Positions 7,739 to 16,407 are shown, counted from the first letter of the stretch. The stretch: DNA of 19,330 nucleotides from Macrostomum lignano (GCA_002269645.1 NIVC01002182.1:67493-86822), one strand, 5' to 3'. Notes: generated from the sequence alone by a model not told the origin. A program made the numbers and translations.

Positions 7739-7979
7739 TACTTTAATTCCGAGACCATTACATCATATAATGGGTGGTTAGACGAAGGTCGGAACTCAGG
7801 ATAATGGGTGGGGGCACTCGTGCATTGAATTCAGCAACACCATAGACACTCGTGCGCTACGCGCACTCGTGATCTAGGCGTTGCTGAATTTAGCACACTC
7901 GTGCCCCCACCCATTATCCTGAGTTCCGACCTTCGTCTAACCACCCATTATATGATGTAATGGTCTCGGAATTAAAGTA
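7739..7979. repeat. 241-bp foldback palindrome
   Basis: 7739-7817 and 7901-7979 are perfect 79-bp inverted arms. An imperfect inner stem closes on GCGCTACGCGC. Confidence 0.97.
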
Positions 7980-8010
7980 ACAAAATTAAAGAAGAATTAA
8001 AGAACCACAG

Positions 8011-8094
8011 GCTACGCGCACTCGTGATCTAGGCGTTGCTGAATTTAGCACACTCGTGCCCCCACCCATTATCCTGAGTTCCGACCTTCGTCTA
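8011..8094 (+). repeat. Exact 84-bp copy of 7856-7939 (right half of the foldback, starting at its apex)
   Basis: Direct sequence comparison. Confidence 0.95.
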
Positions 8095-8546
8095 GCTTCA
8101 TTGTCGCTCGGAAGTACCATAGACAAAATATTTGGTTGAACTTAATTGTATGGCCATAGGCTGCTTATCATATTTTTTGGCCATAGACTGTTTTCAAGGA
8201 AGAAAGGCCCAGAGGGGAGAGAGGGTGGGGAAAATGAAAGCTCTCAAATAACCCTGCTAGCAAGAAAAGCATCATGGTAGACCAAGTGCATCTGATTAAC
8301 TGGGCTAACTTGCCGATTAGTTGTCTTTCTGGTTAGAGTCAGTAGGGTATGCGACTTGGAAGCAGCTGGACATTCTATGGCCGATATTATGGCGACAACC
8401 GGCCAGAAGTGCGAAAAGATCGCCGTTTGCCGATATCTCTCATCAGACGTGGCAAGGTGCTAAAGAAGTGCAGCGACGCCTTAAGAAAGGTACTGGACAG
8501 GGAGAAAAACTCTATTCTACACCGAATTCAGATGGCCATGTTACTA

Positions 8547-9854
8547 CGAGGGATACTCTAAAAGTTTTGCAATTCGACTATTTAAAGTTAATTTTGCCAA
8601 ACTTTTCTATTACAATCCTTCAAAGTAGGCTCCCCGGAACTGCAAACACTTGTGCGCTCGTCCGAGCCACTTGTTCATCAAGCCCTGGAAGTCTTCAATT
8701 GGGATGCCGTCAATCGCCTCCTTCGCCGCCTGCTCCAGCTCCTCGTCGGACTGAAACCTGCGCCCCCTAAGCGACTTTTTGATTTCTGGAAAGAGCCAGA
8801 AGTCGCAGGGGGCGAGGTCTGGTGAGTAGGCCGGGTGTGGTAGCGTTGAAATGCCCTCTTGGTCCAGGAACGCTCGAGTTGCAGCAGCCGTGTGGGCGGG
8901 GGCGTTGTCATGGTGAAGCTTCCGCCCTCGCATTCCCGTCCTTGGCGCCCTCTGGGTCACGCTGTCGATCACGACTGGCAAGCACTCTTCAGTGTACCAT
9001 CGAGCAGTGACTGTAGCTTGACCCTCCAGCTTCACCATCGCCACCACGCCTTGTGAGTCGAAGAAGATGGCAAACATCCGCTTGCCCTGGGACCGGGACC
9101 GCCTTGCTTTCAGGGGTCGTTGACCACCTTCCGGCACCCACTCTGCACTGCTGCGCTTTGTCTCGACGTCAAAATGATACAGAAACGTCTCATCACCAGT
9201 GATGACCTCAGAGCGGCGCTGATGGCTCCCGTGCTCATATCGATCGATGAGAAACTGACAGAACTCCATGCGGGCCTGTTTTTGAGCATCTGTCAGGATG
9301 TGGGGTATCCATCGGGCACAAAGCTTCCTGACTCTCAGGTGATCGTGTAGAATCGTATCGACCGCTGCCGATCCAATGCCGACATTCATAGCTAGCATGT
9401 CCGTGGTGATTCGCGGATCCTGATGAATCAGCTCCTGCACTGCAACGATGTTTTCCTCCGTCACTGCTGTCGGAGGTCTCCCGGGCCGGGGGTCGTCAGA
9501 AAAGCTGGTCCTGCCGGCCTGGAACTCGCGGTACCAGCGTGTAACCGTAGCATATGACGGCGCTTGAGCCTCCAATGTTGCCAGTAGCTCGGCATGAGTC
9601 TCAAGCGCCGTGAGCTTTCGCTTGTGGCAGTACCAAATTAGTAGCCGATTCTGCTCACGATTCAATTCCATGGCTGCAGCTGTACAGTTAAGGAGTCTCT
9701 GACTTTGACTGGGGGCTGAGCAGGCGTATATGTATGAATTAACTTGAAAATTGAGGTGGTGACTATGTACATGTTTATTGTACAGAGAGTTGGTTTTGAA
9801 GATTGTGCGACTTGCGCAAGTGGTTGAATTGCAAAACTTTTGGAGTATCCCTCG
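8547..9854 (-). mobile_element. Complete mariner (Tc1/mariner, DD34D) transposon, 1308 bp
   Basis: 29-bp TIRs CGAGGGATACTC(T/C)AAAAGTTTTGCAATTC with one mismatch, and TA target duplications at 8545-8546 and 9855-9856. Confidence 0.97.
8610..9671 (-). CDS. Mariner transposase, 353 aa, intact
   Basis: N-terminal HTH region, WIPHIL, ITGDET, HHDNAPAH and YSPDLAPCDF, with exactly 34 residues between the 2nd and 3rd catalytic Asp. Start MELNRE at 9671. Confidence 0.97.
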   Translation of the reverse strand: MELNREQNRLLIWYCHKRKLTALETHAELLATLEAQAPSYATVTRWYREFQAGRTSFSDDPRPGRPPTAVTEENIVAVQELIHQDPRITTDMLAMNVGIGSAAVDTILHDHLRVRKLCARWIPHILTDAQKQARMEFCQFLIDRYEHGSHQRRSEVITGDETFLYHFDVETKRSSAEWVPEGGQRPLKARRSRSQGKRMFAIFFDSQGVVAMVKLEGQATVTARWYTEECLPVVIDSVTQRAPRTGMRGRKLHHDNAPAHTAAATRAFLDQEGISTLPHPAYSPDLAPCDFWLFPEIKKSLRGRRFQSDEELEQAAKEAIDGIPIEDFQGLMNKWLGRAHKCLQFRGAYFEGL

Positions 9855-13925: not shown

Positions 13926-14165
13926 ATGGTGCTTATTAACTGGTCCAATCTTCCAGTGGACAGCCTAAACATTGTGAGTAGTAATGAATTTGAGTTTCTT
14001 TCTGAGATTAGTTTAAACAACCATCAAACCGATGCCGACTTGAGCGAGTTCATCAAGTGGATTGAAAATCCTGCGGCTGTCTGGAGAGCTTTTGATTACA
14101 CCTGTACCAATCGGGCCAGATGTGCAGCCGACGGCACAGCCGCAGCTTTTGCGCGGCGCATTTGA
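13926..14165 (+). CDS. Short ORF (79 aa) beginning with the LINWxNLP motif; function unknown
   Basis: MVLINWSNLPVDSL starts 151 bp downstream of a CCATAGAC site. A GTGAGT donor-like sequence lies near 13974, so the product may be spliced. Confidence 0.4.
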   Translation: MVLINWSNLPVDSLNIVSSNEFEFLSEISLNNHQTDADLSEFIKWIENPAAVWRAFDYTCTNRARCAADGTAAAFARRI

Positions 14166-14172
14166 AGGCTGC

Positions 14173-14373
14173 CTACGGCTGTTCAGTCCATGGACTGGGA
14201 GGACGCCAGACCCACCCTAATTTACCCCAGCTAATGCTGGTACCCATTTACAGCTGGGTGAACTGAAGCTATGCAAAATTAAATGTCTTGCAAAAAGACA
14301 CAAATTGTATTAGTGGATTCGGGAGTCGACCTTAAAGTCGCGAATCCGACGCTCTAACCACTAGGCTACAACC
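14173..14373 (-). mobile_element. tRNA-derived SINE with a CORE-like central domain
   Basis: Minus strand starts GGTTGTAGCCTAGTGGTTAGAGCG (A box) with a degenerate B box, then GTGTCTTTTTGCAAGACATTTAA...CAGCTGTAAATGGG, which resembles the MIR/CORE consensus. Confidence 0.65.
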
Positions 14374-15395
14374 CCTTACTTGGCTACATGAATTGTAGGC
14401 TATATTTAATTACAAGGATAGCTACTCGTGATGATATGAAGTCTCATTACTGCTTTCTATGAAAAATTCCAATGATCAGCTACTTGAGAAGCTGTGATCA
14501 CTGTCATCGTGTGGTTATAACAGTAGCTATCCAATACTTGCATATTAATAATTACTACGTTTAGTTCGTAACCGTTTAGAAGCTGTTCGTAACTTTTGCC
14601 ATCGGCTACGTAACATGACTGGAAAAATACTGGTCGAAACTGGATTGACTGCCGTTCTGCATGTTCAGCTACTTCATAGAAATAAGAATTTTTAATTACC
14701 ATTCTGCGCCGCGAACTCAGGCTTGTTAATTTGTCACTGTCGCTACACGATCATTGACTTCGTCGATCGACCTGGCACACGTCGGAACTTGTTCGGAAGT
14801 TCTTGACCTGTCGACTTTCCAATGCAAGCATCATTGCTCAGTAATTGAGCCGTCGACCGAAGCCTGGAGCCGGTTGATTTTGGCCTGAGTAGTGGCCTCT
14901 ATATGTGCCAAAATCCTCAGTGTGTCTGTGAATCAAGGATTTCGTACACTAATATAGACATGAATATCATATCGCAAATTGGTTTATTTCCGCTGCTATG
15001 CAAATGATGGCTCAAGATTGATAATACACTAATACAGTTTTAGAGCTGCTACGAACTACGAACTTTGCTCGAACCTGATTCGTATTATCAATTGTTCTGG
15101 GTACAGAAAATCCCACAGAAGCCTAAAGCAATATTGAGATAAACAGATTAATAAGGACTCAGAGACTAAGAAATTTTGCTAGAGCCTCAAGCAATCAGTC
15201 AAGATTAAATTAATTTAACTCCTAGTGCTTCAATGTTGCCCGAGCTAGTTAAGCAGACAATTTTCGCTTGCGGATTTCTTGATGTTGTGCTTCTTTGCCG
15301 GCCAGCAAGGAGACCGCCACCATGAAATTGCGGGGTTGCCCTGTTGATGCCAATTAACGAAGACTCAGCCGTTATACCATCGGCAGGGCAGTACA

Positions 15396-16407
15396 TGGTA
15401 GATTGCGTAGTAGGTAAGGGACTGAAATAATGGCCATAAACACGAGTGCGCACTCGTGTTTATGGCCATTATTTCAGCCCCTTACCTACTACGCAACGTC
15501 ATTGTCTATAAGACACATAGAGGCCATTATTTCAGCATAGCGTAGTCTGGTGGCCATTATTTCAGCGTGCCGGAAGCGGTCATTATTTCACACTTTTTAT
15601 CACGCTGTAATTGGCTGTTTTGAGAGTTATTTTACCCATAGACGACTGAGATGTGTGTCTTAGTTTGACCATAGACACACTGTGATGAGTGCTGATTTTG
15701 CTTGCGTCTTGCAAGAAATCAGGAAAGCGGGTAGTACGAGTGAAATCTATTTGTGTAGTCAAACAACTATGACTGGTGCATCTCGTCAAACAGCACCGCT
15801 TATTAATTGGAAAAATCTTCTTGTCGACGACTGAACGAACCGTGCGACCTATGCTTCAGTGGAGAATACACAAGAGATGCGGGTGAAGCATGGTAAGTGT
15901 AATATATCAACATTGTAAGTGGTAAATTAGTGGCTATATAAATGGCTATAGTAACTGATTTTTTTACAATTTCCATTAATCTGCAGGTCGGATGGATTCG
16001 GAACGCGCAGCTCGATTCTTTGAGAACTGCCACTTCAAGAATTGCACGTTTCAGTTTTAATGAGCAACTTCTGATGAGCAGTCCATGACTACTGTTGTTT
16101 TTGTGCTTAATTCGCGCGTTTTCCATTGTTTTTTAGCTAAAAATGTCTTGACTATCCTGTTTTTAGTGTATTCCAGAATGTCATGTAGACTGTTTGCGAT
16201 TATTCCCTTATGCCAGTTAATATATGAATATTTTAACTAATCGTCTATGGTTCAAACGTCTGCTAAAGCTGAAATAATGGCCAGTTGAGTTTGTCATTAC
16301 GCCAGGCTGTGTCTTCTGGACAATGGCCATAGACACTCGCGCGCTACGCGCGCTCGTGTTTTGGCCATTATTTACCTCCGCTACCCATATAGCAATCTAC
16401 CATTGTT
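15396..16407. mobile_element. ~1 kb non-autonomous element with ~55-60 bp imperfect terminal inverted repeats and a 94-bp palindrome at 15403-15496
   Basis: The left end ATGGTAGATTGC...AAATAATGGCCATAAACACGAGTGCG mirrors the right end at ~16348-16403. It contains CCATAGAC sites at 15636, 15669, 16243 (reverse) and 16327. Confidence 0.7.
15769..16060 (+). pseudogene. Two-exon mini-gene (65 codons) with LINWxNL motif and Crypton-like NCxFxNCTF tail; one in-frame TGA
   Basis: Exon 15769-15892, GTAAGT...CTGCAG intron 15893-15986, exon 15987-16060. The spliced frame reads MTGASRQTAPLINWKNLLVDD*TNRATYASVENTQEMRVKHGRMDSERAARFFENCHFKNCTFQF*. Confidence 0.5.

What the first reader, a model, noticed from the sequence alone, without database searches (positions are those of the whole stretch)
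7840..16334. Tyrosine recombinase embedded in an array of CCATAGAC sites with site-gene-site cassettes: candidate eukaryotic integron-like system
Seen: exact CCATAGAC at 7840, 8117, 8181, 10077, 10315, 10555, 10585, 13775, 15636, 15669 and 16327 (+), and at 10776, 12517, 12631 and 16243 (-). That is 15 copies by manual count, against ~0.26 expected in 8.5 kb at uniform composition, and I found none in 1-7800 or after 16334. Four genes start ~90-150 bp downstream of a site on their own strand (8181>8274, 12524>12398, 13775>13926, 15669>15769). Sites often come as doublets 27-37 bp apart. Known: tyrosine recombinases integrate and excise circles at short core sites, and Cryptons are proposed to move via circles. 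Inference: the DUF3504 enzyme builds a cassette array at these sites, analogous to an integron. Conservative alternative: nested Crypton derivatives that target their own termini.
Basis: partly seen in the sequence, partly recalled or inferred. Interest (0 to 1): 0.88.

Follow-up and report, generated by a model that had tools for sequence, protein, structure and literature searches.

The report
Crypton transposon nest sharing one 8-mer
The 15 CCATAGAC copies are real and belong to a decayed cluster of Crypton-type (tyrosine-recombinase) transposons whose relatives in a flatworm and other genomes carry the same 8-mer near their ends, so it is probably the recombinase's docking motif rather than the boundary of integron-like gene cassettes.

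Summary
Observation confirmed: 15 exact CCATAGAC at the stated coordinates and strands, against 0.36 expected, and none elsewhere in the window.

The motif is not a copy-paste repeat. Most copies sit in unrelated contexts, with a weak extended consensus TTKRR-CCATAGAC-W.

It travels with a Crypton lineage:
- A Macrostomum lignano locus around a 42%-identical recombinase has 11 copies within 6 kb and none in the other 15 kb. It holds the same three gene types: A-type recombinase, B-type recombinase and a small acidic ORF C.
- Logan contigs of 53-67% relatives also have sites about 100-200 bp upstream and 115-280 bp downstream of the gene.

Four 99%-identical M. lignano A copies define a 1.85-kb mobile unit. 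Its ends are not at the sites, which lie inside its 5' palindrome. Two of the four copies inserted 37 and 57 nt from a pre-existing site.

The window array is decayed: the A gene has a compensated frameshift, B is truncated, the C copies are broken, and a mariner and a SINE have inserted.

Verdict: a nest of CryptonA-type units sharing a conserved subterminal cis-motif. The motif is probably a recombinase-binding site, with a promoter element as the main rival.

The parts
7840..7847 (+). CCATAGAC site, 11 nt left of the centre of a 241-bp palindrome (7739-7979)
   Evidence: (I1)
8117..8188 (+). Two exact sites (8117, 8181) and one 1-mismatch copy (CCATAGGC, 8154), upstream of C1
8274..10076 (+). 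C1: remnant of the small-ORF unit (MVDQVHLINWANLP..., stop after 20 codons), split by a mariner at 8545-9856. Site-to-site length without the mariner is about 584 bp.
   Evidence: (I6)
8545..9856 (-). Secondary insertion, not part of the system: mariner element with 39-nt inverted ends (34 nt at 94% by BLAST), TA duplication and a DDE_3/HTH_48 transposase
10077..10084 (+). CCATAGAC site, downstream end of the C1 unit
10315..10322 (+). CCATAGAC site, 238 bp after the previous one and 240 bp before the next. It bounds non-coding pieces rich in GGACATTATCCA and GGCCATTATTTCAG repeats.
10549..10608 (+). 30-bp tandem unit x2 (GTTGGGCCATAGACTATAAATAAAAAAGCT) carrying sites 10555 and 10585. A third, diverged copy lies at 13769-13798.
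   Evidence: D7
10728..10837 (-). Conserved non-coding module: GC-rich half-palindrome, then cattctaaCCATAGAC (site 10776-10783), then an AT-rich tail. It is 81-83% identical to modules upstream of A genes in L001 and L003, where the CDS is only 62-64% identical.
11046..12398 (-). A-type Crypton tyrosine recombinase, 450-aa ORF (QRICH1 N-domain plus DUF3504). Catalytic residues are R207, K241, Q338, R341, H364 and Y372. About 25 codons (aa ~306-330) are out of the ancestral frame.
12517..12524 (-). CCATAGAC site starting 126 nt upstream of the A gene ATG, sense. L001 has the equivalent at -116.
12579..12646 (-). Diverged second copy of the module (78% to 10727-10791) with site 12631-12638, set between 13-15-nt inverted repeats. 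Together with 10728-10837 it gives a ~70-bp direct repeat flanking the A gene.
13032..13660 (+). Truncated B-type Crypton recombinase (N-terminal ~160 aa, ...NPLVDYTDDFMGGFDPNVL...), divergent from A. It is 39% identical to the M. lignano B gene.
13775..13782 (+). CCATAGAC site (CCATAGACTATAAG) starting 151 nt upstream of C2
13926..14165 (+). C2: 79-codon small acidic ORF (MVLINWSNLPVDSL...SEFIKWIENP). Its C-terminal part is unrelated to the M. lignano protein and a tRNA-derived SINE follows at ~14176-14375. Homologous to the M. lignano ORF L005 9138-9500.
   Evidence: I3
15403..15590 (.). 94-bp perfect-like palindrome and repeats of the second motif GGCCATTATTTCAG. A related block lies at 10392-10507.
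   Evidence: (I4, D4, D8)
15636..15676 (+). Site doublet (15636, 15669) starting 133 and 100 nt upstream of C3
15769..16080 (+). C3: broken copy of the small-ORF unit (M..APLINWKNL, stop after 21 codons, possible intron). Site-to-site length 15669 to 16327 is 658 bp, against 645 bp in M. lignano.
16243..16334 (.). Divergent site pair 16243(-) and 16327(+). At 16326/16327 two different homology blocks abut exactly at the 5' edge of the site: 16271-16326 matches 10639-10694, and 16327-16358 matches 7840-7871.
   Evidence: (D5, D6)

Best explanation
Window 7840-16334 is an old, decaying nest of Crypton-type DNA transposons of the animal DUF3504 (CryptonA) kind, together with their derivatives.

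It holds:
- one A-type recombinase gene, with an intact ORF but an internal compensated frameshift;
- one truncated B-type recombinase gene, divergent from A;
- three remnants of a ~0.6-kb unit with a small acidic ORF (C);
- several non-coding pieces.

A mariner and a SINE inserted later.

CCATAGAC, or more fully TTKRR-CCATAGAC-W, is this lineage's conserved subterminal cis-motif. Each unit brings 1-3 copies about 95-240 bp upstream of its gene and one about 115-280 bp downstream. Six or more units therefore give 15 copies.

**Shown**
- The motif is conserved with the same gene families in other genomes.
- It lies inside the mobile unit, not at its junctions.
- The non-coding module around it is more conserved than the coding sequence.

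**Inferred**
- The motif is a DNA-binding site of the element's own tyrosine recombinase. It could be an arm or accessory site or a recombinase-binding element, and it sits in the palindromic end regions.
- By recruiting recombinase it makes existing copies preferred landing zones, so units pile up side by side and tandem satellites of the motif arise.

This is not an integron-like gene-capture platform.
For: **The motif is real and strictly kept**
- Enrichment is shown. Contexts are mostly unrelated and there is a shared flank preference.

**It travels with the gene families**
- M. lignano L005 has 11 sites, all in 4017-9907, against 0.35 expected. They surround a B gene, a C ORF and an A gene, and none lie among the neighbouring host genes.
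- L001 (A, 56% identical) has 4 sites in 2.3 kb. L003 and L007 each have one 115-209 nt after the stop. L016-19 (B, 67% identical to the M. lignano B) have sites at -195, -123 and +150.

**Orientation argues for an end-marking element**
- Sites are sense for A and C but antisense for B, in three independent genomes. This fits an end-marking element better than a directional promoter.

**The mobile unit is defined in M. lignano**
- Four M. lignano A copies at about 99% identity share exactly 9706-11557, with unrelated flanks, no inverted ends and no target duplication.
- The sites lie in and next to a 137-bp 5' palindrome.
- In L005 and L021 the left end lies 57 and 37 nt 3' of a pre-existing same-strand site.

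**The surrounding module is under constraint**
- The non-coding module at window 10728-10837 is 81-83% identical to L001 and L003, against 62-64% for the CDS.

**A related family puts the motif at the terminus**
- In a related CryptonA family with seven independent insertions (P0010), the 17-mer CATAGATAGGGATATAA is the exact 3' terminus. It recurs inverted about 112 nt inside the 5' end.

**Literature**
- CryptonS elements share TATGG termini, and GTCTATGG contains TATGG. Animal Cryptons were reported to have no terminal repeats (PMC3212892).

**The proteins look like recombinases**
- The alignment shows the catalytic residues, and the model matches Cre-loxP and QRICH1 by fold.

**Motif-bearing satellites exist**
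- L020 has 20 copies of a 31-33-bp unit, and L022 has about 13 copies of an 83-bp unit, 11 with the exact motif.
Against: - No protein-DNA binding has been shown.
- The motif's steady position about 100-180 bp upstream of every ATG, often followed by TATAA, fits a promoter element equally well.
- In M. lignano the A element's junctions carry no CCATAGAC, and two of four copies inserted with no site nearby. Targeting is therefore at best a preference, and it rests on only four copies.
- Unit ends in the window itself cannot be defined from a single copy.
- C homology between species is weak (pairwise E = 2e-6, no other homologues), so C may not be a real gene.
- The host of the window is unknown, and genome-wide motif counts could not be made.
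Confidence: 0.55

Rival explanations
1. CCATAGAC is a promoter or transcription-factor element, possibly followed by a TATA-like box, that drives each of the lineage's genes. The array simply reflects many promoters of clustered elements, and recombination does not involve the motif.
For: - The nearest upstream site lies -93 to -181 from the ATG for A, B and C genes in all genomes.
- Several sites read CCATAGACTATAA(A/G).
- The conserved module has a GC-rich part followed by an AT-rich TATATGA stretch ahead of the A gene in L001 and L003.
Against: - Sites also sit at a consistent distance downstream of stop codons.
- Orientation is antisense for B and sense for A and C.
- Gene-less tandem satellites of the motif exist.
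- In the P0010 family the related motif forms the exact 3' terminus.
- The motif is kept across hosts as different as a flatworm and marine-metagenome eukaryotes, and it changes slightly with the recombinase lineage (CATAGAT in P0010).
Confidence: 0.28
2. This is the first reader's model: an integron-like platform in which the DUF3504 recombinase captures circular gene cassettes by crossover at CCATAGAC, so that each site is a cassette boundary.
For: - Site-gene-site layout holds for A (1.75 kb), C (0.58-0.66 kb) and B.
- One junction of two homology blocks lies exactly at the 5' edge of site 16327.
- The M. lignano 5' palindrome, with inverted motif copies near its ends, superficially recalls attC.
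Against: - Recent M. lignano A copies move as a unit whose ends are not at the sites.
- There is no cargo other than the system's own genes.
- Orientations are mixed.
- A elements occur alone.
- There is no evidence of a common promoter.
- All units in the window are degenerate.
Confidence: 0.05
3. The motif is a host-genome element, such as an insulator, a small-RNA cluster signal or a satellite seed. It merely accumulates in repeat-rich regions where Cryptons also land, and has no functional link to the recombinases.
For: - M. lignano loci show the motif in satellites and in spots without recognisable Crypton genes (L021 14812, 15880, 15966, 17340).
- The window region is transposon-rich.
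Against: - The motif is inside the mobile A unit itself.
- It flanks A or B genes on short contigs from several unrelated samples.
- It is absent from the neighbouring host genes in L005 and from the window's flanks.
Confidence: 0.07

Closest known systems
CryptonA (animal Crypton DNA transposons encoding a DUF3504-type tyrosine recombinase; Kojima & Jurka 2011, PMC3212892)
   Same: - A single intronless recombinase ORF of about 450 aa with a QRICH1-like N-domain plus DUF3504, and with R..K..R..H..Y retained.
- Unit size about 1.75-1.85 kb.
- No inverted ends, long terminal repeats or target duplications in the M. lignano copies.
- Multi-copy at 99% identity.
   Different: - Animal Cryptons were reported to have no terminal repeats or defined cis-sites. 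Here a strictly conserved 8-mer, within palindromic modules, recurs near both ends and is shared by two recombinase lineages.
- The A lineage has Gln in place of the first catalytic His.
- A small-ORF unit also carries the motif.
- Units cluster, and the motif seeds satellites.
CryptonS and CryptonF short terminal direct repeats (TATGG or 6-bp; PMC3212892)
   Same: GTCTATGG contains TATGG. The idea of a short recombination-related sequence at the ends of elements is shared.
   Different: In M. lignano the 8-mer is not at the junction and the ends share no direct repeat. CryptonS and CryptonF have different domain architectures and different hosts (oomycetes, diatoms, fungi).
Arm-type or subterminal recombinase-binding repeats of bacterial tyrosine-recombinase elements (lambda Int arm sites, Tn916/Tn1549 ends) and subterminal repeats of eukaryotic DNA transposons (from general knowledge)
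   Same: Several short asymmetric repeats in both orientations lie within a few hundred bp of the element ends, and they are distinct from the crossover point.
   Different: Binding is untested here. There are no known accessory factors. The elements are eukaryotic and have no defined core site.
Integrons (intI, attI, attC cassettes)
   Same: A tyrosine recombinase lies next to an array of short conserved sites, and some of those sites sit in imperfect palindromes.
   Different: There is no cargo diversity, no uniform orientation, no platform promoter, and the mobile-unit boundaries are not at the sites.

Membership tests
Crypton (CryptonA group) | Encodes a tyrosine recombinase (DUF3504-type) with catalytic R-H-R-Y and no reverse transcriptase | tested here: met
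   - Pfam gives DUF3504 at 6e-17, QRICH1 at 6e-8, and a weak Phage_integrase hit.
- The alignment shows R207, K241, R341, H364 and Y372 invariant.
- The first His is Gln in A-type and His in B-type.
- Foldseek matches QRICH1 and Cre-loxP.
- There is no RT domain among the region's long ORFs scanned.
Crypton (CryptonA group) | No terminal inverted repeats, no long terminal repeats, no target-site duplication | tested here: met
   Four M. lignano A copies and seven P0010 copies have sharp ends, with no inverted ends and no duplication. This could not be tested on the window's single copy.
Crypton (CryptonA group) | Multi-copy and mobile: near-identical copies in unrelated flanks | tested here: met
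   M. lignano has at least 9 full-length proteins in one 90% cluster. Four loci are 98.9-99.2% identical over 1.85 kb with unrelated flanks. For the window's own genome this is not testable, because no other sequence of that genome is on hand.
Crypton (CryptonA group) | Excision as a circle and site-specific reintegration | not testable with these tools
   Needs circle sequencing or outward PCR. This has never been shown for animal Cryptons in the papers read.
Integron-like cassette system | Cassette boundaries coincide with the conserved core site | tested here: not met
   On the left, the M. lignano A unit ends 28 nt outside a degenerate copy of the motif and 114 nt outside the first exact CCATAGAC. 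On the right it ends 66 nt beyond a degenerate CCATAGAA.
Integron-like cassette system | Diverse promoterless cargo genes, all in one orientation behind a platform promoter | tested here: not met
   Only recombinase genes and one small ORF family are present, on both strands, each with its own upstream site.
DIRS/Ngaro tyrosine-recombinase retrotransposons | Reverse transcriptase and RNase H next to the recombinase; split or inverted long repeats | tested here: not met
   No RVT hit was found in the window's ORFs scanned. The M. lignano unit is 1.85 kb with a single ORF.
Tc1/mariner (the insertion at 8545-9856 only) | Inverted ends, TA duplication, DDE transposase with HTH domains | tested here: met
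   Inverted-repeat arms of 39 nt (34 nt at 94% by BLAST), TA on both sides, and DDE_3, HTH_48 and Transposase_1 hits.

The most novel reading that the evidence does not exclude
Two distinct tyrosine-recombinase lineages and a small-ORF unit all use one shared cis-motif. They are A, with a conserved His-to-Gln change, and the canonical B. They are found together, with A and B divergently oriented, in two genomes whose proteins are only about 40% identical. This could be a multi-component, site-directed Crypton system. The recombinases might act together, in an XerC/XerD-like way, on CCATAGAC-bearing palindromes. Units would then integrate next to each other's sites and build self-extending arrays and satellites. 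That would be an animal analogue of site-specific cassette accumulation, though without foreign cargo.
Probability: 0.15. Interest if true: 0.75.

Novelty: new variant of a known kind. Interest (0 to 1): 0.42.

Why it matters
Cryptons are the least understood class of eukaryotic DNA transposons. Transposition has never been reconstituted, and animal Cryptons were reported to have no recognisable terminal repeats or cis-sites. DUF3504 proteins were also domesticated into vertebrate regulators (ZMYM2-4, QRICH1, KCTD1).

This lineage offers several concrete handles:
- a strictly conserved 8-13-bp motif;
- a non-coding module that is more conserved than the protein;
- sharp element ends in a laboratory flatworm that has transgenesis.

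With these, binding, circle formation and target choice become directly testable. The finding also explains how such elements can form clusters and motif-bearing satellites. It does not reveal a eukaryotic integron.

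Tried and rejected
- **Exact look-ups of window proteins.** None is in the collection, so the source genome and other copies from it could not be reached.
- **Literature search for the motif string.** It returned only primer hits. 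No paper links Macrostomum and Cryptons beyond one review.
- **JGI metagenome scan with an A-type profile.** It gave 6 loci, mostly distant relatives on short contigs, and none had the exact motif.
- **Homologue search for the C ORF.** Nothing was found, so its function and even its coding status stay open.
- **Logan contigs of the P0009 B family.** They end in an internal repeat (ATAATCCCGGAG), not at element ends, so they could not define termini.
- **tRNA and Rfam scans.** There are no tRNA genes. The only Rfam hits are sub-threshold miRNA-hairpin matches to the 15403-15496 palindrome, taken as an artefact of a perfect hairpin.
- **Structure model of the window's A protein.** It is mediocre (pLDDT 61), partly because of the frameshifted stretch. 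The fold matches are used only as support.
- **Rejected readings.** Chance was rejected on the shuffles. A simple duplicated repeat was rejected because the contexts differ. A general host promoter motif was rejected because it is absent from the adjacent host genes in L005 and from the window's flanks.

Full report
**1. The observation**

Dinucleotide-preserving shuffles give a mean of 0.36 and never more than 3. One-mismatch variants are barely more numerous than exact copies and are mostly scattered background, so the 8-mer is kept strictly.

Contexts are mostly unrelated. Only three small groups share longer sequence:
- 7840 and 16327;
- 10555, 10585 and 13775;
- 10776 and 12631.

Pooling 32 sites from the window and from relatives gives a weak extended consensus, TTKRR-CCATAGAC-W. 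A second short motif, GGCCATTATTT(CAG), occurs 9 times exactly in the same stretch.

**2. What lies in the region**

| Coordinates | Strand | Feature |
|---|---|---|
| 11046-12398 | - | 450-aa ORF with QRICH1 N-domain and DUF3504, here called 'A-type' |
| 13032-13660 | + | N-terminal part of a second, different DUF3504 recombinase, 'B-type' (...NPLVDYTDDFMGGFDPNVL...), divergent from A |
| 8274, 13926, 15769 | + | Three reading frames sharing an N-terminal ..LINW.NL(P).. motif, 'C' |
| 8545-9856 | - | Mariner with inverted ends and TA duplication |
| ~14176-14375 | - | tRNA-derived SINE |

- Only the C copy at 13926 runs for 79 codons. It ends just before the SINE. The other two stop after about 20 codons, and the first is split by the mariner.
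- A fragment of the SINE lies inverted at 12739-12808.
- The A ORF is open, but about 25 codons (aa ~306-330) read in the wrong frame. Another frame gives NQSLGLHSLEAVVRNLVVCL, which matches the family consensus. The structure model is very poor exactly there.

The array is therefore old and damaged.

**3. Relatives**

The A protein has few relatives (8 clusters). The three closest come from Logan and JGI contigs, and a fourth is from Macrostomum lignano (42% identity).

*The M. lignano locus L005* (21.3 kb) has 11 exact CCATAGAC, all within 4017-9907, against 0.35 expected. None lie among the adjacent host genes. It contains the same three gene types:
- a B-type recombinase at 5034-6425(-);
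- a 120-aa acidic ORF at 9138-9500(-), whose N-terminus aligns ungapped with the window's C2 (pairwise E = 2e-6);
- the A-type gene at 10001-11326(+).

B and A are divergent, as in the window, but C lies between them. The order of units therefore differs between the two genomes.

*Short contigs of other relatives* show the same layout:

| Locus | Gene type and identity | Site positions relative to the gene |
|---|---|---|
| L001 | A, 56% to the window | -367, -116, +174 (inverted), +281 |
| L003 | A | +209 |
| L007 | A | +115 |
| L016-19 | B, 67% to the M. lignano B | -195, -123, +150 |

Across all loci the nearest upstream site lies -93 to -181 from the ATG. Downstream sites lie +114 to +281 from the stop. 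Sites are sense for A and C and antisense for B.

*Site-to-site lengths* are similar across genomes:

| Unit | Window | L001 | M. lignano |
|---|---|---|---|
| A | 1.75 kb | 1.75 kb | not applicable |
| C | 0.58 and 0.66 kb | not applicable | 0.65 kb |

**4. Where the mobile unit ends**

Three more M. lignano A copies were fetched (L020, L021, L022). All four are 98.9-99.2% identical over exactly 9706-11557. L020 lacks part of a palindrome. Beyond those points the flanks are unrelated.

- The unit starts GTATACATTCTCC... and ends ...CTTTCTGTAGGTT(AA).
- It has no inverted ends and no target duplication. This agrees with Kojima & Jurka 2011, who found no terminal repeats in animal Cryptons (PMC3212892).
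- The motif copies are internal:
  - a degenerate GGCTATGG starts 28 nt inside the left end;
  - CCATAGAC starts 114 nt inside it, and these two sit near the ends of a 137-bp imperfect palindrome;
  - GTCTATGG lies 101 nt before the ATG;
  - a degenerate CCATAGAA ends 66 nt from the right end.

The 8-mer is therefore a subterminal internal motif, not the crossover junction. This contradicts the cassette model for the A unit.

In L005 and L021 the left end lies 57 and 37 nt 3' of a pre-existing, same-strand CCATAGAC that belongs to the flank. In L020 and L022 there is none nearby. This hints at preferential landing beside existing sites, but it rests on four copies. L020-22 carry no B or C genes within 10 kb, so A moves alone.

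**5. Further evidence that the motif region is functional**

- The ~110-nt non-coding module at window 10728-10837 consists of a GC-rich half-palindrome, then cattctaaCCATAGAC, then an AT-rich tail. It is 81-83% identical to modules upstream of the A genes of L001 and L003. The coding sequences are only 62-64% identical.
- A diverged second copy (12579-12646) lies upstream of the window's A gene, so the gene is flanked by ~70-bp direct repeats.
- In a related CryptonA family (P0010, B-like), seven insertions with different flanks define a 1757-bp element. Its exact 3' terminus is CATAGATAGGGATATAA, and the same 17-mer recurs inverted about 112 nt inside the 5' end. A CATAGA-type motif is thus part of a true Crypton terminus, and it varies with the recombinase lineage.
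- CryptonS elements share TATGG termini, and GTCTATGG contains TATGG.
- M. lignano also has gene-less tandem arrays of the motif: 20 copies of a 31-33-bp unit in L020 and about 13 copies of an 83-bp unit (11 with the exact motif) in L022. These echo the window's 30-bp doublet at 10549-10608.
- In the window, two homology blocks abut exactly at the 5' edge of site 16327. This is compatible with rearrangement next to a site.

**6. Mechanism**

*Shown:*
- The region is a nest of units of one Crypton lineage.
- The 8-mer is that lineage's conserved subterminal motif.

*Inferred, about even odds:*
- The motif is a binding site for the element's own tyrosine recombinase within palindromic end regions. 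It would be analogous to arm-type or subterminal binding repeats.
- It recruits recombinase, so that new copies land beside old ones.

The A and B proteins keep the catalytic R, K, R, H and Y. A-type has Gln for the first His in all but one member. The model matches Cre-loxP and QRICH1 by fold.

The main rival is a promoter element. Its position upstream of each ATG and the frequent TATAA after it fit that reading. The downstream copies, the opposite orientation in B, the satellites and the terminal position in P0010 fit it less well. The two roles could also coexist.

**7. Comparison and novelty**

The elements pass the tests for CryptonA: recombinase only, no inverted ends or duplications, and multi-copy. 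They fail those for integrons, because boundaries are not at the sites, there is no cargo diversity and orientations are mixed. They also fail those for DIRS/Ngaro, because there is no reverse transcriptase.

Relative to the literature read (PMC3212892; PMC13465315, which also found no repeats around fungal DUF3504 Cryptons), the following appear new:
- the conserved cis-motif and module;
- its sharing by two recombinase lineages and a small-ORF unit;
- the clustering and the satellites.

This makes it a new variant of a known kind, of moderate interest mainly as an experimental handle on Crypton mechanism.

**8. Limits**

- The source genome of the window is not in the searchable collections, so unit ends, copy number and polymorphism in that genome are unknown.
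- Repbase and Dfam were not available.
- No binding, circle or transcription data exist.

Noticed in passing
window 746-6925: A block of densely packed ORFs on both strands that looks like an endogenous dsDNA-virus or Polinton-like element. ORF 2076-3035(-) has an A32/FtsK-type packaging ATPase (Pfam Pox_A32 at 4.6e-6; a PHROG terminase-like hit at 2.7e-8). The other ORFs, some with Q/P-rich repeats, have no family match. The DNA of this block was deliberately not printed as a whole.
   Followed up: partly
window 7286-7660: About 3.6 copies of an 81-bp tandem repeat lying between the virus-like block and the first CCATAGAC site.
   Followed up: no
window 7739-8094: A 241-bp palindrome (arms 7739-7857 and 7861-7979, 88-90% complementary) with a CCATAGAC near its centre, followed by a 100%-identical 84-bp duplicate of its right arm (7856-7939 = 8011-8094).
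   Followed up: partly
window 10407-16373: A second enriched motif, GGCCATTATTT(CAG): 9 exact and 5 one-mismatch copies on both strands, against 0.42 expected. Relatives have analogous but different second motifs: GCGTGTTATTGTC in M. lignano L005 and GG.CCATCAAAT in L001 and L003.
   Followed up: partly
window 8545-9856 and 18649-18963: One full-length mariner with an open transposase frame is inserted in C1. A separate mariner transposase fragment lies at the right end of the window, next to a ~0.9-kb (TCTG)n microsatellite (17710-18599).
   Followed up: partly
window 14176-14375 and 12739-12808: A tRNA-derived SINE abuts C2, and a 70-nt fragment of the same SINE lies inverted 1.4 kb away (86% complementary). 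The pair mimics a terminal inverted repeat.
   Followed up: no
window 11046-12398 (aa ~306-330): The recombinase ORF is open, but a stretch of about 25 codons is out of the ancestral frame because of two compensating indels. AlphaFold confidence collapses there.
   Followed up: yes
window 15410-15489: Sub-threshold Rfam miRNA-precursor hits (mir-2001 at 39.7 bits against a gathering score of 74) on both strands of the near-perfect 94-bp palindrome. Most likely this is just a hairpin artefact.
   Followed up: no
L020 4805-5413; L022 13340-14336: M. lignano tandem satellites in which nearly every unit carries CCATAGAC: 20 copies of a 31-33-bp unit, and about 13 copies of an 83-bp unit (11 with the exact motif). 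No gene is present in either array.
   Followed up: partly
L008/L009 176-3277: In two marine-metagenome contigs a P0010-type Crypton sits directly after a non-LTR retrotransposon ORF (endonuclease plus reverse transcriptase). This is a nested insertion in another repeat.
   Followed up: no
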